64,000 bases of DNA from Macrostomum hystrix (taxonomy: Eukaryota; Animalia; Platyhelminthes): the NCBI GenBank assembly GCA_950097015.1, contig CATNEN010000029.1:8246001-8310000 (forward strand), given 5' to 3'. The notes below the pieces were generated by a model. That model saw nothing but the letters and a program-made list of their open reading frames with translations, did no database searches and was not told where the DNA came from. Below are positions 53,713 to 62,900 of the stretch, one piece after another. Each line of letters begins with the position of its first letter. The first letter of the stretch is position 1. Made by a program: the position numbers and the translations under genes.

Positions 53713-54141
53713 TCACTCCAATGTAGACAGCATCATCAGCTGGCGCAGCACTTTGGTCTGGCTGGTCTCTCTGATCTCACCGGCTAAAAACATCTCGTCA
53801 ACCACAGTGTAGACCTTGTAGAAATTGAACACCAGATCCAGCTCGCACACATTCTGAAAGTATTCGTTCAGCACTTCAACAAAATTGTGAATAGCCTCCA
53901 GGTACATCAGATTATTGTCGCCGATGTCTACGCAGATGCAAAAGTACAGGCCGGCGTAACGGCGATAGACGATCTTATAATTGCGAAACTCCACAAAGTT
54001 GGTGTGCTTGGCGTCGCGAACTGTGACTGTGGCGTGCACCTCCTCGATGAGCTTCTGCTTCTCTTCGTCGGCAAACTCCATGTACCATTTAGCTAGGCGG
54101 GTCTTGCCCGCGCGGTTCTGGATCAGGATGAAGCGAATCAT
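53713..54141 (-). CDS. AP2S1: AP-2 complex subunit sigma (142 aa, intronless CDS)
   Basis: [20 protein letters not shown]...[35 protein letters not shown] is the recognisable AP2S1 sequence at the canonical length from the ATG at 54141. Confidence 0.96.
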
Positions 54142-54264
54142 GTCTGCGCTGAAACTGAAGCCAGGGCCCACCTTTTGTTAACAGAGAGCTACTCGCGACC
54201 GGTTCACGAGCTTCTGTGCCTTTTCCTAAACTGTCTTCATCTCAATCTAGGCTACTTCTAGCCT

Positions 54265-55868: not shown

Positions 55869-57339
55869 TCAGACATGCTTATCGTAAAATTTTCGCACAA
55901 TAACATTAGGCCTCAGCTTGCTGCTAATACCCTGCGCCTCCGCCCAGCGTTTAAACTCGGCGGTTCGTTCTGCGTTCAACTGGACGGCCTTCTCGCGCAG
56001 CCGTTTAATCTCCTCATCGTTGGCGGCAGGCTGCGATTGGCCAGCGGTCAGCGGTTTCTTGCCCTTCTGGCCGGCGGTGCGCTCAGCGAATAGCAGGCTG
56101 TACCAGCTGAAGCGGCCCATAGCTGGCATGCCGTGCCGCTTGGCGAAGTTCAGCATCTTGCGGCGCTTCTTGGCTGCCTCGGCCGCAGCTGCGTCGGCGC
56201 CAGGAGACGAGGCGGTGTTGCCCGACTGCGACTTCAGGGCGGCGGCCTGATGAGTGAAAATTGGGGAGTGACGGAGTGAGGGAAGCTCACGGGAAGAGTG
56301 ACACGATCCGTGAGGGTGATGGGAGGAGTGACACGATCCGTGAGAGTGCCGGGAAGAGTGACACAATCCGTGAGGGTGACGGGAAGAGTGACATGATCCG
56401 TGAGAGTGACGGGAAGAGTGACACGATCCGTGAGAGTGCCGGGAAGAGTGACACAATCCGTGAGGGTGACGGAAAGAGTGACACGATCCGTGGGAGTGAC
56501 GGAAAGAGTGACACGATCCGTATGAGTGACGGGATGACGGGACGAGTGACACGATCCGTTAAAGTGACGGGAAGAGTGACACGATCCGTGAGGGTGACAG
56601 GAAGAGTGACACGATCCGTGAGGGTGAGGGGAGGAGTGACACGATCCGTGAAAGTGACGGGACGAGTGACACGATCCGTGAAAGTGACGGGAAGAGTGAC
56701 ACGATCCGTGAGGGTGACAGGAAGAGTGACACGATCCGTGAGAGTGACGGGAAGAGTGACACGATCCGTATGAGTGACGGGATGACAGGAAGAGTGACCC
56801 GATCCGTATGAGTGTCGGGATGACAGGAAGAGTGACCCGATCCGTTAGGGTGATGGGAGGAGTGACACGATCCGTGAGACTGACGGGAAGAGTGACACGA
56901 TCCACGCGAGTGACGGGAAGTGTGACATGACCCGCGCAAGTAGCCGAAATATTTTCCACGCAATGTTGCAGCTTGCCAAATAAAGAATAGAAACCCGAAA
57001 TACCTCCTGTTTGAGCTTGGCCTTCTCAGCTTCGTCCAGCTGTTTATAAAGCCGGCCCAGCTCGGCAATGGTGGCCTTCGGAGCCAAGCCGGGATTCTCA
57101 GCTCTCACTTTGGCAAAGTTAGATTTCACGAACAGCGAATAGGCGTTGAGAAGCTTGGCCGGCTTGCCAGGCTGCTCCTGAGATGACAGACCCTTTGAAG
57201 AGGCCAGCAGCAGCGGATGCGTCAGCGGAGGCTTCTCGTACAGCTGCCAACAGATGTTGGCCACTGAGCGGCTCTGGCAGCGGGCGACAGCGCGAAGTCC
57301 GCTAGCCGCCAAGGCAATGGAATTGAATAGCGAGCCAGC
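55869..57339 (-). CDS. HMG-box protein, TFAM-like (mitochondrial); exons 57339-57004 and 56246-55869; initiation codon not found in the genome
   Basis: HMG box PGKPAKLLNAYSLFVKSNFAKVRAENPGLAPKATIAELGRLYKQLDEAEKAKL; second box-like HGMPAMGRFSWYSLLFAER; Arg/Ser/Ala-rich N-terminus without acidic residues; phase-0 intron GAG|GTATTT ... CATCAG|GCC. The TFAM assignment is inference. Confidence 0.75.
56265..56930. repeat. 30-bp minisatellite (GGGAAGAGTGACACGATCCGTGAGAGTGAC), HMG gene intron
   Basis: Tandem units of the same family as 58840-59586. Confidence 0.93.
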
Positions 57340-57430
57340 CTGAAATTGTGGGGACAGATGGGAATTGGGATTTCACCTGAATGGGATTTTAACGAATTAT
57401 CAACGCTGCCTAGCTAGCTAGATAACTTAG

Positions 57431-57503
57431 GAGAGCTTGTAACACAGTGGTTAGAGCTTCTGACTTCTGAGAGAGAGGTCTGGAGTTCGAATCTCAGCAC
57501 AAG
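57431..57503 (+). pseudogene. tRNA-Arg(UCU)-like pseudogene or SINE head
   Basis: AGTGGTTAGAGCTTCTGACTTCTGAGAGAGAGGTCTGGAGTTCGAATCTCAGC; a homolog of 44001-44072. Confidence 0.55.
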
Positions 57504-57532
57504 AGAAATAATCTGGGTAAGGGGGGTGGGGA

Positions 57533-57830
57533 GTGGCAGTGCGGTTTAACGCGTTTGCCTTTCGCACAAAGGTCCCTGAGCTCGATTCCGCGGCGAGGCC
57601 ACATTTAACTGGGGCTTGTCATGCAATTTACGCTTTTGAGGGCCAACCTACAAGGCACAGTGGGAGTGTACACTGCCTGACGATGAGAAAGATGTACACA
57701 CCTGTGTGAGTGTATGCCTGCGTACGGTATGTGTGCGAGTGTGCTCAGGAGCCAGCTGGCTGCTGGCTGCGGGTCTAGTGTCTACAAATCGTGTGTCATT
57801 GCCCGCAGCCCTCCTGAAATTATTATTAGC
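57533..57830 (+). mobile_element. tRNA-derived SINE, copy 6
   Basis: Head GTGGCAGTGCGGTTTAACGCG...GAGCTCGATTCC, core with deletions, tail TGAAATTATTATTAG. Confidence 0.8.
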
Positions 57831-58541
57831 TTGTCTGTGAGCAAGATCAGCTGGGGTAGAAATTTAAGCGCGTGTGGCGGCCTCCTTAGTCCACGGACTG
57901 AACAGCTGTGCACAGCCTTTTGGAAGCGCTGCGATGGGTCATAGATGTGGCTATCTATCTGTACTATCTATATTTAGGGTAGACTCTCTACATACTAAGT
58001 GTCAGAAGGGTTAACAGTGCTTAACTGGCCTAGACAAGCAGAAAAAAATCAAAGTTACTTTTAAAGTAATGAGACGGAAAAGTTTATACTCTGAATTTAA
58101 AAAATTCAGAGTATAATCGAATGTGAAGTATCAGTAGATTTATAATCAAAATTCTGTCAAGAAGGCTAAAAATGAGGAAAGAATATTATTTCATATTGTA
58201 GCAGCTTACTCACTGAAATTTCTTCTAGACAAGTTTGAAATGTAGAAAGTGTCAGGTAGAGTATAAAATACATAAAAATAATGTCTAATCATTCTTTACA
58301 AAACAGACCAAGCAGCATTTGAGATCGCAGCTCAGTTGTAAGACGGGAACCAAATGATTTGGCAATAAAACAAGTAAATAGAACGCGTAGAAAGTTATTT
58401 TTAGACCTGAGGCATTACGGGCCAGAATGGCATCATATTGCTACTGAAGAGTAGTGCGTTGAGAATATTTTGATTCTATTTAATCAAATAAGGCGCAAAA
58501 GTGAACGAATAAACAAAAATTGTCTGCACAATTTAAGTCTC

Positions 58542-59894
58542 TTTTATTTAAGTTAAACGACAGACATCGAAATCGAAATTTCACAGTAAATATCGAAATA
58601 GAAAGCAGCCGTTATCGAAATTCTAAAATTTATTAACGCGTTAGGAATCTTAGAAATGTAGAGTTTTAAATCCTTTGGAATTGAAAATCAACTACACGAT
58701 GTGCGACAGAAAACATAAAAAAATGGACAGAAAAACATCTCCTAAAGTTGTAAAATATTCTCGTCAAAAAAATCTGTCATAAAAATATCTTTATCGATAT
58801 TGAAATCTCACAATCGACATGATAGGACGATGGTGACCTCACGATCCGTGAGGGTGACAGGAAGAGTGACACGATCCGTGAGAGTGACGGGAAGAGTGAC
58901 ACGATCCGTATGAGTGACGGGATGACAGGAAGAGTGATCCGATCCGTGAGAGTGACGGGAAGAGTGACACAATCCGTATGAGTGACGGGATGACAGGAAG
59001 AGTGATCCGATCCGTGAGAGTGACGGGAAGAGTGACACAATCCGTATGAGTGACGGGATGACAGGAAGAGTGATCCGATCCGTGAGAGTGACGGGAAGAG
59101 TGACACAATCCGTATGAGTGACGGGATGACAGGAAGAGTGATCCGATCCGTGAGAGTGATGGGAGGAGTGACACGATCCGTTAGGGTGATGGGAGGAGTG
59201 ACACGATCCGTGAGGGTGACGGGAAGAGTGACACGATCCGTGAGGGTGACAGGAAGAGTGACACGATCCGTATGAGTGACGGGATGACAGGAAGAGTGAT
59301 CCGATCCGTGAGAGTGACGGGAAGAGTGACACGATCCGTATGAGTGACGGGATGACAGGAAGAGTGATCCGATCCGTGAGAGTGATGGGAGGAGTGACAC
59401 GATCCGTGAGGGTGACAGGAAGAGTGACACGATCCGTGAGGGTGACGGGAAGAGTGACACGATCCGTGAGGGTGACAGGAAGTGTGACACGATCCGTGAG
59501 AGTGATGGGAGGAGTGACACGATCCGTGAGAGTGATGGGAGGAGTGACACGATCCGTGAGGGTGACAGGAAGAGTGACACGATCCGATTTTTTTTTATTT
59601 AAGTTAAACGACAGACATCGAAATCGAAATTTCACAGTAAATATCGAAATAGAAAGCAGCCGTTATCGAAATTCTAAAATTTATTAACGCGTTAGGAATC
59701 TTAGAAATGTAGAGTTTTAAATAATTTGGAATTGAAAATCAACTACACGATGTGCGACAGAAAACATTAAAAATGGACAGAAAAACATCTCCTAAAGTTG
59801 TAAAATATTCTCATCGAAAAAAAATCTGTCAAAAATATCTTTATCGATATTGAAATCTCACAATCGACATGATGGGACGATGGTGACCTCACGA
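58542..59894. repeat. ~300-bp direct duplication (58542-58844 and 59593-59894) flanking a 30-bp minisatellite (58840-59586)
   Basis: Both copies run from TTTTATTTAAGTTAAACGACAGACATCG to GGTGACCTCACGA with few substitutions. Confidence 0.92.
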
Positions 59895-59933: not shown

Positions 59934-62900
59934 TTAGTCGCTCTCGCGCAACACGCGGCGCAAGATTTTGCCTGACGGATTACGCGGTATGGCCGAAACG
60001 AATCTAACGCCGCCCTCCAGCCGTTTATAGTCGGCGGCATTCTTGGCCACAAAGTCGGCCACCTGGCGCTCTGTGAGCTTCGGGTCCGAGTCTGACCGGC
60101 GGACAATGTAAGCGCGCGGCGCTTCGCCCAGACGATCGTGCGGCACGCCGATAACACCGGCGTCTGCGACGCCCGGGCAGGCCAGGAGCAGGGCTTCCAG
60201 CTCTGCGATGGATAGGGAAAACTAAGGATATAAGTATTGGTGGGCTACTATAAGTAGGATAATATGATTTTTTTATAGCAAACAGCTGTTGAGGGTAATT
60301 ACTGAAAAACCCTGTGATGGGTCACACCAAAAACGGAACCGGAGGGCCAATGACCCATCACAGAGTTGGGATAATACTAATGACCGATCATAGAGTTGGG
60401 ATAATACTAATGACCGATCATAGAGTTGGGATAATACTAATGACCGATCATAGAGTTGGGATAATACTAATGACCCATAATAGAGTTGGGATAATACGCT
60501 CGTACTAATGACCCATCATAGAGATGGGATAATACTAATGACCGATCATAGAGATGGGATAATACTAATGACCGATCACAGAGTTGGGATAATACTAATG
60601 ACCGATCATAGAGTTGGGGCAATACTAATGACCGATCATAGAGTTTGGATAATACTAATGACCGATCATAGAGTTGGGGCAATACTAATGACTGATCATA
60701 GAGTTTGGATAATACTAATGACCGATCATAGAGTTGGGGTAATACTAATGACCGATCATAGAGTTGGGGTAATACTAATGACCTATCATAGAGTTGGGAC
60801 AACATTAATCTGATTATAGAGCTGGGGATAAGATCATACAAGCATATAACTCGGAAAGTTCAATGACTGATCATAAAACTCGTCAGGAGTCAATGACTGA
60901 TCATAAAACTCGTCAGGAGTCAATGACTGATCATAAAACTCGTCAGGAGTCAATGACTGATCATAAAACTCGTCAGGAGTCAATGACTGATCATAAAACT
61001 CGTCAGGAGTCAATGACTGATCATAAAACTCGTCAGGAGTCAATGACTGATCATAAAACTCGTCAGGAGTCAATGACTGATCATAAAACTCGTCAGGAGT
61101 CAATGACTGATCATAAAACTCGTCAGGAGTCAATGACTGATCATAAAACTCGTCAGGAGTCAATGACTGATCATAAAACTCGTCAGGAGTCAATGACTGA
61201 TCATAAAACTCGTCAGGAGTCAATGACTGATCATAAAACTCGTCAGGAGTCAATGACTGATCATAAAACTCGTCAGGAGTCAATGACTGATCATAAAACT
61301 CGTCAGGAGTCAATGACTGATCATAAAACTCGTCAGGAGTCAATGACTGATCATAAAACTCGTCAGGAGTCAATGACTGATCATAAAACTCGTAAGGAGT
61401 CAAAGAGTGATCATACAACTCGTCAGGAGTCAATGAACGATCATAGATCTATTGAGTCAATGACCGATCATAGATCTAATGAGTCAATGACCGATCATAG
61501 ATCTAATGAGTCAATGACCGATCAAATAGCAATGACCCATTCCCGCCATAGCTCTCACCAGCCGGCGCCACCTGGAAGGCCTTGACCTTGATGAACTCCT
61601 TCAGCCGGTCTGTAATAAAGAATTGACCGTACTTATCGTACCAGCCGACATCTCCGGTGTGATACCAGCCATCCTTCACCGACTCAAGCGTCGCGTGCTC
61701 ATTCTTATAATAGCCCAGCATGCGATGCGGCCCAGTGACAACTATTTCGCCGCTTTGATTTGGTCCCAGATCTTCGCCAGTGACAGTAGACACAAGGCGG
61801 GTTCGCTGCAACGACACTGGCACACCGACGGAGCCCATGTGATCCGATCCCGCCAGCCGACGCTCCAGGGGTGGCACCACGTGGGTTAGCGGCGACATCT
61901 CCGTGCCACCGTAGGCTTGGATAACGTCCACAGTTGGATTCCATCTGGGATTAGAGTCACCTAAATTGTTATAGCATGGTCACTGCTGGCGATTGTTACA
62001 GCAGGAAATTGTCCCAACAGGCAATCGTCACTACAGGCAATTGTCCCAACAGGAAATTGTAGTGAGTCGCTAGTTACTAGGCTTAGCATCTAGCTCCCTC
62101 TCATTGACTAGCTAGTCATCGCCGCTGTGTGGTTTAGTTTAGTCTCCCTTAAAAGTTTAGTTAATGAGTTGGTTACAGTATAAAACTTTGGCCGGTATTT
62201 CCACGGTTTTTCCACGGCAGTTTTGGCACGCCCACGGTAATTCCGCCTGCCTAAATCTTTCCAGCCAATGAGAGCGCTAGAAAGGCCTCCGTCAATGGCA
62301 GAGTTGGAAGGGATCCAAACCGTATATAAATACGAGCCACACTAGAGCCCAAAAATAAGAGCGCGTCGCGAGCACCGGCCGCGGAGTCTAAGTCTTAAGT
62401 TAGGGGTTTGGACAAGCAATACCTTACCTTACGCTTGGATAAGTGCGGCCAGCATCAATTAGGACTAGAAGAAATTTGGATAAGAGCGTCTTTGTATTAG
62501 ATAGTAGGCAGCGAGAGAACTCTTGGATAAGGGACCAACTCTTGTCATTAGCTGATTAGGTAATTAGGTTGCTGGGATTTCTTTTGGATAGGAGTCATAC
62601 GCAGACGTGCAGGTGATCTCGTGAATTCGAGACCTGCTGTTGGTACAGTAGTGAGATATCTCTTGGCCGAAAGATTAATCCTGTCAGGGACCTATTAGGG
62701 ATTGACCGCCGTCTCCTCCGTTCAGCAGCGTCCGTGTTTAGCGTGGATATTGTCCACAGACATTGTCTCCCAGTCTCGTACCTCAGGTGTTTATTTCAGA
62801 AGCTAACCAACATGTTTAATTACAAATACTCGTAATTCTTCTCACGATATTTTAAATGATTAAAAAGTAAGGAAACAACAATAGCTCACCTTTGAGCCAA

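What the first reader, a model, noticed from the sequence alone, without database searches (positions are those of the whole stretch)
57004..57345. TFAM-like gene lacks a genomic start codon; a spliced-leader AUG would complete its mitochondrial presequence in frame
Seen: the first visible exon starts after a strong acceptor (CACAATTTCAG|GCT at 57339) in phase 0 and contains no Met in 112 codons. Reading upstream without splicing hits TGA at 57375-57373. A possible 37-nt mini-intron (GT at 57376) leads to TAA, not ATG. Adding ATG at the acceptor gives M-AGSLFNSIALAASGLRAVARCQSRSVA, an Arg/Ser/Ala-rich segment without acidic residues, typical of a mitochondrial targeting peptide. Established: flatworm spliced leaders end in a conserved AUG that can serve as initiator Met. 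Inference: this mtDNA-packaging protein may get its initiator Met from trans-splicing, which would tie its mitochondrial import to SL addition.
Basis: partly seen in the sequence, partly recalled or inferred. Interest (0 to 1): 0.75.

Follow-up and report, generated by a model that had tools for sequence, protein, structure and literature searches.

The report
TFAM start codon from spliced leader
In the flatworm Macrostomum hystrix the gene for the mitochondrial DNA-packaging protein TFAM has no start codon of its own and most likely takes it from the AUG that ends the trans-spliced leader, a habit already known in flatworms; its sister species M. lignano keeps a genomic ATG.

Summary
On the minus strand, a 112-codon exon (57339-57004) opens straight after a TTTCAG acceptor. 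It has no ATG in any frame, and an in-frame TGA lies 12 codons upstream. The genome is the published M. hystrix assembly. Its spliced-leader (SL) genes read ...TTGCATG|GTAAG, so the SL ends in AUG, which falls in phase 0 with the exon.

RNA contigs from two samples match the genome only up to the acceptor. Each then carries 21 further non-genomic letters, and the base joined to the exon is G. Nothing covers the 115 nt upstream. The tool did not print the 21 letters, so I have not read the leader's identity. No ATG-bearing cis mini-exon within 2.6 kb upstream fits the RNA.

The protein (238 aa as modelled) is collinear with flatworm proteins that their sources name mitochondrial transcription factor A. 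Only its first HMG box is recognisable.

New here: the M. lignano ortholog has its own ATG 6 nt after the homologous acceptor, and the SL AUG there is out of frame (AUG CCC UAA).

The mechanism has been known since 2006, and this scan has already reported several such mitochondrial genes on other DNA of this genome. I class it as a new member of a known kind, of modest interest.

The parts
57340..57345 (-). Trans-splice acceptor TTTCAG (AG at 57341-57340), preceded by a pyrimidine-rich tract
   Evidence: Sequence. It matches the [T/C]TNCAG motif reported for M. lignano SL acceptors (PMC8629364). RNA contigs stop matching the genome here.
57004..57339 (-). Exon 1: 112 codons in phase 0 from its first base, with no ATG in any frame
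   Evidence: Covered end to end by RNA contigs X5 rec12 and X6 rec20. 58% identical to the M. lignano ortholog P0001.
57256..57339 (-). Presequence-like N-terminal segment (first 28 exon codons; with the SL Met it reads M-AGSLFNSIALAASGLRAVARCQSRSVAN)
   Evidence: In the first 30 residues there are 3 Arg, no acidic residue, and many Ala/Ser/Leu; the first acidic residue is at position 36. Hydrophobic moment is 0.51, reached by 7% of shuffles. This is a heuristic only. The pattern ALAA-G-R--AR is kept in M. lignano.
57016..57150 (-). HMG box A (its third helix continues into exon 2)
   Evidence: Pfam PF00505, E = 4.4e-8, residues 64-108. In the M. lignano ortholog model this box matches solved HMG boxes: SSRP1 Z 9.8, Abf2p Z 8.4, TFAM box B Z 7.8.
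56247..57003 (-). Intron 1 (GT at 57003-57002, AG at 56248-56247), filled by a 30-bp minisatellite at 56289-56934
   Evidence: The splice is shown by the X3 rec4 loose end, which equals the start of exon 2.
55869..56246 (-). Exon 2: 125 codons plus the TGA stop. It holds the linker, the FAKRHGMP motif, a degenerate second HMG box and the C-terminal tail
   Evidence: 64% identical to M. lignano P0001. Aligns with box B of neodermatan TFAM-named proteins, which do score as two HMG boxes. Pfam finds no box here.
57341..58283 (-). Presumed outron or intergenic stretch, removed by trans-splicing. It contains an interspersed repeat at about 57509-57828
   Evidence: The TFAM transcript gives no coverage at 57341-57455. 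The repeat has 40 or more scored copies (3916 first-look candidates) in the genome at 75-91% identity. Upstream-gene transcripts end between 58733 and 58284.

Best explanation
This is the single-copy TFAM ortholog of Macrostomum hystrix. It is a two-exon gene on the minus strand.

Proposed mechanism: the pre-mRNA is SL trans-spliced at the TTTCAG acceptor at 57340. The 35-nt leader ends in AUG, and that AUG lands in phase 0 directly before GCT GGC TCG. It is then the only AUG in the first 461 nt of the mRNA. Translation from it gives a 238-aa precursor with four parts: a roughly 28-residue Arg/Ser/Ala-rich presequence, a spacer, HMG box A, and a degenerate box B with a tail.

What is shown:
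- the gene structure;
- the absence of any ATG in exon 1;
- an SL that ends in AUG in this genome;
- transcripts whose match to the genome starts exactly at the acceptor and which carry a short non-genomic leader ending in G;
- homology to flatworm proteins that their sources name TFAM.

What is inferred:
- that the short leader is the SL;
- that the SL AUG is the initiator;
- that the N-terminus is a mitochondrial targeting peptide.

Comparison with M. lignano: the ortholog has a genomic ATG 6 nt after the homologous acceptor, and the SL AUG there would open only AUG-CCC-UAA. The source of the start codon has therefore changed within the genus.
For: Species: the genome figures (220,453,370 nt, 42 contigs) equal those published for M. 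hystrix.

SL: 23 exact copies of the SL 35-mer, and a gene copy reading ...TTGCATG|GTAAG followed by an Sm-like site. No SL-like sequence lies in cis anywhere in the window.

Acceptor: it fits the published trans-acceptor motif.

RNA:
- Contigs X5 rec12 (1086 nt) and X6 rec20 (846 nt), from different samples, align on the minus strand from 57340 to 57003 at record positions 22-356. Both therefore hold exactly 21 unaligned letters 5' of the acceptor.
- The alignment runs one base past the exon onto the G at 57340 and stops before the A at 57341. This is what a leader ending ...TG would give.
- Depth is zero at 57394-57455, and only the last 9 positions of the 57332-57393 bin are covered.
- A break after about 22 leader letters in a k = 31 graph assembly is what a sequence shared by thousands of transcripts should produce (7,254 SL genes reported in M. 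hystrix). That step is my inference.

Frame and AUGs: no ATG in exon 1 in any frame, and the SL AUG is in frame with the conserved ORF.

Cis mini-exons: of 27 in-frame ATG...|GT candidates in the 2.6 kb upstream, only the three that share the 58407 donor end in G. They end in CAG, which would have extended the alignment to 57342. Their donor GTCTAA is weak, and RNA depth there is 0 in X5.

Identity: the profile search gives full-length collinear hits to Echinococcus and Clonorchis proteins named 'transcription factor A mitochondrial' (E = 1.4e-8 and 6.9e-5). These proteins have two HMG boxes.

M. lignano: orthologs P0001-P0005 exist. The NCBI models are flagged partial, and one (P0002, in locus L013) starts 2 nt after a CAG acceptor. 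The downstream clathrin-adaptor gene is syntenic.

Prior art: Cheng et al. 2006, as cited in PMC9851317 and PMC12582326.
Against: - The 21 leader letters were not displayed (table 7 was truncated), and read laying allows one call. The leader's sequence is unread.
- The runs are contigs, not reads, so minor isoforms with a cis exon would be invisible.
- An earlier follow-up in this genome (s1-316733) found one such claim wrong because of a tiny upstream ATG exon, so such exons do exist here.
- No translation or localisation data exist.
- The presequence call rests on my own simple composition and hydrophobic-moment heuristic; 7% of shuffles reach the same moment.
- Pfam, Foldseek and the single-sequence models do not detect box B.
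- TFAM names in the homologs are source annotations, not experiments.
Confidence: 0.85

Rival explanations
1. A short cis-spliced 5' exon, further upstream or too short to be laid, is joined to 57339. It carries the real ATG, or only 5' UTR.
For: The leader letters were not seen. A 21-nt side is below what the joint table lists. Tiny ATG-bearing first exons exist in this genome according to an earlier follow-up (s1-316733).
Against: - Both independent contigs stop after exactly 21 extra letters. A private exon would normally be assembled further and to different lengths.
- No in-frame ATG...|GT candidate within 2.6 kb upstream ends in a non-A base followed by G, as the alignment ends require.
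- There is no unique RNA coverage between 57341 and 58283 in X5.
- The ortholog's annotated transcript in M. lignano also starts at the acceptor.
Confidence: 0.07
2. The mRNA is SL trans-spliced, but translation does not use the SL AUG. It starts at the in-frame UUG at 57312 (GCC UUG G context) or at Met143 in exon 2.
For: The UUG has -3 G and +4 G. The SL AUG has a U at -3. Non-AUG starts are documented in SL organisms (PMC9851317).
Against: - The SL AUG comes first and is a true AUG with +4 G.
- Flatworm SL AUGs have been shown to initiate, and more than 40 S. mansoni cDNAs need it (Cheng 2006).
- Starting at Met143 would delete the presequence and HMG box A, both conserved with M. lignano.
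- A UUG start would still give a presequence-like N-terminus, so the biology would hardly change.
Confidence: 0.05
3. The 21 letters are a library artefact (for example a template-switch oligo ending in G) attached to a transcript that truly starts at 57339/57340.
For: The library type of X5/X6 is not on record. Such oligos end in G.
Against: - A transcription start falling exactly on the first base after a consensus TTTCAG acceptor would be a coincidence.
- It would leave the conserved ORF with no AUG at all.
- The same boundary is annotated in M. lignano.
Confidence: 0.02

Closest known systems
Flatworm mRNAs that take their initiator Met from the SL 3'-terminal AUG (Cheng, Cohen, Ndegwa and Davis, J Biol Chem 2006; 'slORFs' in PMC9851317)
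   Same: The SL ends in AUG directly before its donor. The acceptor sits in phase 0 of a conserved ORF that has no ATG of its own. The SL AUG is the first and only AUG ahead of the functional domains.
   Different: A different species (the free-living macrostomorph M. hystrix) and a different gene (TFAM). Here the congener M. lignano retains a genomic ATG with the SL AUG out of frame, so the change of start-codon source can be placed within one genus.
Echinococcus granulosus thioredoxin glutathione reductase (Agorio et al., J Biol Chem 2003; known to me only by its title, listed in the references of PMC12582326)
   Same: Trans-splicing in a flatworm determines whether a mitochondrial N-terminus is encoded.
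   Different: There, alternative trans-spliced mRNAs give mitochondrial and cytosolic variants. For this gene I saw only one transcript form and have no evidence of a second isoform.
TFAM / Abf2 / HMG-5 family of mitochondrial HMG-box DNA-packaging proteins
   Same: About 240 aa. N-terminal presequence-like segment, HMG box A, basic linker, second box region and C-terminal tail. Full-length collinear with flatworm proteins that their sources name TFAM.
   Different: Box B in Macrostomum has lost part of helix 2, including the conserved Trp, and is not recognised by Pfam. A 25-30 residue spacer (WQLYEKP...EQP) lies between the presequence and box A and is absent from neodermatan orthologs.
Other SL-AUG-dependent mitochondrial genes reported by this scan in the same genome (TOP3A, cardiolipin synthase, EARS2, YARS2, a thimet-type peptidase)
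   Same: Same genome, same mechanism, same kind of RNA evidence, and the same class of product (a presequence-bearing mitochondrial protein).
   Different: A different locus. Those reports are unchecked AI notes, and I did not re-test them.

Membership tests
SL-AUG-initiated flatworm mRNA | The species' spliced leader ends in AUG immediately 5' of the SL donor | tested here: met
   23 exact SL 35-mers in G000. Gene copy L001 reads ...TTGCATG|GTAAG. The M. hystrix paper agrees.
SL-AUG-initiated flatworm mRNA | The mRNA carries the SL joined at the acceptor that opens the ORF | tested here: inconclusive
   Contigs of two samples end their genome match at 57340 and carry 21 further letters whose last joined base is G. 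There is no coverage upstream. The letters themselves were not shown.
SL-AUG-initiated flatworm mRNA | The SL AUG is in frame with the conserved ORF, and no other AUG precedes the functional domains | tested here: met
   Phase 0 at 57339. No ATG in exon 1 in any frame. The next AUG is codon 143.
SL-AUG-initiated flatworm mRNA | No cis exon supplies an ATG | tested here: met
   No candidate among 27 in 2.6 kb upstream fits the RNA alignment ends or the coverage. A more distant exon is not excluded.
SL-AUG-initiated flatworm mRNA | Translation actually initiates at the SL AUG | not testable with these tools
   Needs ribosome profiling or a reporter.
TFAM (mitochondrial transcription factor A) | First HMG box | tested here: met
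   PF00505, E = 4.4e-8. Fold match of the ortholog model to HMG boxes, Z 7.8-9.8.
TFAM (mitochondrial transcription factor A) | Second HMG box | tested here: inconclusive
   Pfam does not detect it. Foldseek finds nothing for the exon 2 model. Even so, the region aligns column for column with box B of neodermatan homologs that score as two boxes.
TFAM (mitochondrial transcription factor A) | Closest relatives are TFAMs rather than nuclear HMG proteins | tested here: met
   The only full-length single-stretch hits are 214-242 aa flatworm proteins. Two of them are named 'transcription factor A mitochondrial' by their sources. Names are annotations, not experiments.
TFAM (mitochondrial transcription factor A) | Cleavable mitochondrial presequence; mitochondrial location; mtDNA binding | tested here: inconclusive
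   Composition and amphipathicity heuristics are consistent. TargetP and MitoFates are not available. Localisation and binding are not testable here.
Downstream gene of an SL-resolved operon | Same-strand upstream gene within 1 kb after subtracting repeats (criterion of PMC8629364) | tested here: inconclusive
   An AMP-binding enzyme gene lies upstream on the same strand. Its transcripts end at 58733-58284. The gap is 944-1393 nt, of which about 320 nt is interspersed repeat, so the case is borderline.

The most novel reading that the evidence does not exclude
Handing the start codon to the spliced leader may not be random in Macrostomum. It may be concentrated in nuclear genes for presequence-bearing mitochondrial proteins. 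This scan has now flagged TFAM, TOP3A, cardiolipin synthase, EARS2, YARS2 and others in one genome. One explanation is neutral: presequences tolerate N-terminal change, so a shift of the acceptor can swap the ATG without cost. The other is functional: it would place mitochondrial biogenesis under SL/TMG-cap-dependent translation. The TFAM pair (M. hystrix uses the SL AUG; M. lignano has its own ATG behind a 2-codon SL-opened mini-ORF that overlaps it as UAAUG) would then be a snapshot of that turnover.
Probability: 0.12. Interest if true: 0.6.

Novelty: new member of a known kind. Interest (0 to 1): 0.3.

Why it matters
Practical value: genome annotation of Macrostomum and other flatworms will mis-call or truncate genes like this one. 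The M. lignano records of the ortholog are flagged 'partial', and an ATG-seeking predictor in M. hystrix would start at Met143 and lose the presequence and the DNA-binding box.

Biological value: it adds the mitochondrial genome's main packaging and transcription factor to the list of proteins whose N-terminus exists only after trans-splicing. The contrast with M. lignano shows that the source of a start codon can switch between genomic and SL-donated within a genus.

It does not reveal a new mechanism.

Tried and rejected
Searches that gave nothing:
- The search for homologous proteins with exon 1 (length window 90-287 aa) found nothing. No M. hystrix transcript-derived protein is in that collection, so I could not reach the RNA contig through the look-up of encoding contigs to read the leader.
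- Read laying printed only the best-supported loose ends.
- Exon 2 alone: no Pfam family, no meaningful PDB sequence hit, an Atlas feature hit of only 0.75, a single-sequence AlphaFold model at pLDDT 65, and no Foldseek match.
- The full-length model of the M. lignano ortholog was poor (pLDDT 56). It only re-found box A.

Ideas tested and dropped:
- The upstream stretch looks tRNA-like by eye, but ARAGORN and Rfam find nothing. It is an interspersed repeat.
- DNA alignment of the 5' flanks of M. hystrix and M. lignano is uninformative upstream of the coding part.
- The genome holds no paralog of either exon.

Housekeeping:
- My first coordinates for exon 2 were out of frame and were corrected to 56246-55872.

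Full report
**What is there.** On the minus strand, an exon runs from 57339 to 57004. It follows the acceptor CACAATTTCAG| and ends at a GT donor at 57003-57002. It translates to 112 codons without Met. Read without splicing, the same frame meets TGA at 57375-57373. The exon holds no ATG in any of the three frames, where mononucleotide shuffles give 4.1 on average (P = 0.013).

The intron (57003-56247) is filled by a 30-bp minisatellite at 56289-56934. Exon 2 is 56246-55872, with the stop at 55871-55869. My first coordinates for exon 2 were out of frame.

**Which organism.** The window is contig 29 of a genome of 220,453,370 bases in 42 contigs. These are exactly the figures published for the Macrostomum hystrix assembly (PMC10468722).

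The 35-nt SL of M. lignano (PMC8629364) occurs 23 times without mismatch in this genome, many copies at about 11.6-kb spacing. One copy reads ...TTGCATG|GTAAG followed by an Sm-like site. The SL of this species therefore ends in AUG directly before its donor. The genome paper says the same and reports 7,254 SL trans-spliced genes, about 20%. No SL-like sequence lies in cis anywhere in the window. The acceptor TTTCAG fits the [T/C]TNCAG motif reported for M. lignano trans-splice acceptors.

**RNA evidence (runs found).**
- Two contigs from different samples, X5 rec12 (1086 nt) and X6 rec20 (846 nt), lie on the minus strand from 57340 to 57003 at record positions 22-356.
- Both stop matching at the donor and then continue for 730 and 490 letters. 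A third run (X3 rec4) shows the exon 2 sequence directly after 57004. These are therefore spliced RNAs.
- At the 5' side both contigs hold exactly 21 letters that do not lie on the laid stretch.
- The alignment runs one base beyond the exon, onto the G of the AG at 57340, and stops before the A at 57341. The base joined to the exon is thus G, preceded by something other than A. This is what ...ATG would give.
- Depth falls to zero between 57341 and 57455.

The tool listed only the best-supported loose ends. The one at 57340 was not printed, and only one call is allowed, so I have not read the 21 letters.

An identical break after about 22 leader letters in two k = 31 graph assemblies is what a sequence shared by thousands of transcripts should give. 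The graph branches once the gene-specific part of the word falls to about 8 nt, and log4 of 7,254 is 6.4. A private 5' exon would normally assemble further and unequally. This last step is my inference, not a tool result.

**Test of the cis-exon rival.** An earlier follow-up in this genome found a similar claim wrong because of a tiny upstream ATG exon (s1-316733). I therefore listed every in-frame ATG...|GT between 57341 and the stop codon of the upstream gene at 59934.
- Of 27 candidates, only the three that share the donor at 58407 end in G.
- They end in CAG, which would have carried the alignment on to 57342.
- Their donor is GTCTAA, and RNA depth there is 0 in X5 and 5.5 in X6, against 43 and 57 for the gene.

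No cis mini-exon within 2.6 kb fits. A more distant one is not excluded.

**What the gene encodes.**
- Exon 1 carries an HMG box (PF00505, E = 4.4e-8).
- The gene is single-copy in the genome.
- A word search with exon 2 found the M. lignano ortholog P0001 (UniRef A0A1I8I6W1, 223 aa). It is 58% identical over exon 1 and 64% over exon 2.
- A profile of both species, searched against 1.84 billion representatives, gave as its only full-length single-stretch matches flatworm proteins of 214-242 aa. Among them are Echinococcus multilocularis 'transcription factor a mitochondrial' (E = 1.4e-8) and Clonorchis sinensis 'Transcription factor A mitochondrial'.
- Those proteins score as two HMG boxes. 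Their box B aligns with the Macrostomum exon 2 region SWYSLLFAER...KRWAE, where Macrostomum lacks part of helix 2. This explains why Pfam, Foldseek and single-sequence models see only box A.

The TFAM label is thus supported by collinear homology to source-named TFAMs. It is not supported by experiment.

With the SL Met, the N-terminus is M-AGSLFNSIALAASGLRAVARCQSRSVAN. It has three Arg, no acidic residue before position 36, and an amphipathic moment that 7% of shuffles reach. This is consistent with a presequence, but it is only a heuristic.

**Comparison with M. lignano.** This is the one new point. The NCBI models of the ortholog are flagged partial (P0002, P0003). Their loci L013 and L014 keep the exon 1 donor position and the downstream clathrin-adaptor small-chain gene.

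In both loci the sequence reads CCAG|CCCTAATGCTCAGC. The P0002 model starts 2 nt after this CAG, which fits an SL-trimmed transcript. A genomic ATG lies 6 nt into the exon and opens MLSSALAAANG.... An SL joined there would read AUG CCC UAA, a two-codon frame whose stop overlaps the real AUG. That Met aligns with Leu4 of the M. hystrix exon.

So M. lignano uses its own ATG, while M. hystrix has none and has the acceptor in phase with the SL AUG. That the M. lignano site is a trans-splice acceptor is inferred from the annotation, not from reads. The polarity of the change is unknown without an outgroup.

**Surroundings.** The upstream gene on the same strand is an AMP-binding (acyl-CoA synthetase-like) enzyme, and the downstream gene is an AP-complex sigma subunit. 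Upstream-gene transcripts end between 58733 and 58284. The gap to the acceptor is 944-1393 nt, of which about 320 nt is an interspersed repeat. By the M. lignano criterion of under 1 kb after subtracting repeats, an operon is possible but not shown.

**What is known already.** All reported flatworm SLs end in AUG (PMC12582326). Cheng et al. 2006 showed it can initiate translation, is in frame in 28% of S. mansoni trans-spliced mRNAs, and is required by more than 40 cDNAs (as summarised in PMC9851317). Trans-splicing that decides between mitochondrial and cytosolic variants was described for Echinococcus TGR; I cite Agorio et al. 2003 by title only. This scan has already reported the same mechanism on other DNA of this genome: TOP3A, cardiolipin synthase, EARS2, YARS2 and a peptidase. 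I did not re-test those notes.

**Verdict.** The leader letters are still unread, and translation and import are untested. I put 0.85 on 'SL trans-spliced and started at the SL AUG'. It is a new member of a known kind. The claim that import is 'tied' to SL addition adds little, because every transcript seen carries the leader. Interest is modest (0.3) and rests mainly on the within-genus switch of start-codon source and on the value for annotation.

Noticed in passing
window 56289-56934 and 58840-59586: The same 30-bp minisatellite unit, in the same orientation, forms two arrays of about 650-750 bp. One lies inside the TFAM intron and one about 1.5 kb upstream of exon 1. They bracket exon 1 and the interspersed repeat.
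   Followed up: no
window 58559-58820 and 59610-59870: Identical short strings recur at an offset of about 1050 bp on the minus strand: ATGTCGATT|GTGAGA, ATGTTTTCT|GTCGCA and ATGTCT|GTCGTT. This suggests a tandem duplication of about 1.05 kb (unique part plus minisatellite) in the 3' region of the AMP-binding gene.
   Followed up: no
window 57509-57828: Interspersed repeat with 40 or more scored copies (3916 first-look candidates) in the genome at 75-91% identity. It is present in very many RNA contigs, with summed depth in the thousands. It looks tRNA-like by eye, but ARAGORN and Rfam find nothing.
   Followed up: partly
L013 2996-3009 and L014 2987-3000 (M. lignano): If the SL is joined at CCAG|CCCTAATGCTC, the SL AUG opens a two-codon frame (AUG CCC UAA) whose stop overlaps the gene's own AUG as UAAUG. 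That arrangement would need leaky scanning or reinitiation for TFAM synthesis in M. lignano.
   Followed up: partly
window 57205 and 57217: All RNA contigs that cover these places (X5, X6, X1) differ from the assembly in two ways: a 3-nt in-frame deletion in the CTGCTGCTG run (one Leu fewer), and A>C on the plus strand at 57217 (His41 to Gln in exon numbering). Both lie in the spacer between the presequence and box A. This is likely allelic or strain variation.
   Followed up: no
window 53713-54171 (minus strand): Clathrin-adaptor small-chain gene (PF01217, E = 1e-61). The family match starts at the Met of MIRFIL. It lies on the same strand, 1.7 kb downstream of TFAM, and is syntenic in M. lignano.
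   Followed up: no
G000 contigs 15, 17 and 42: Exact SL copies recur at about 11.6-11.7 kb spacing. This agrees with earlier notes that the SL RNA gene sits in every rDNA spacer.
   Followed up: partly
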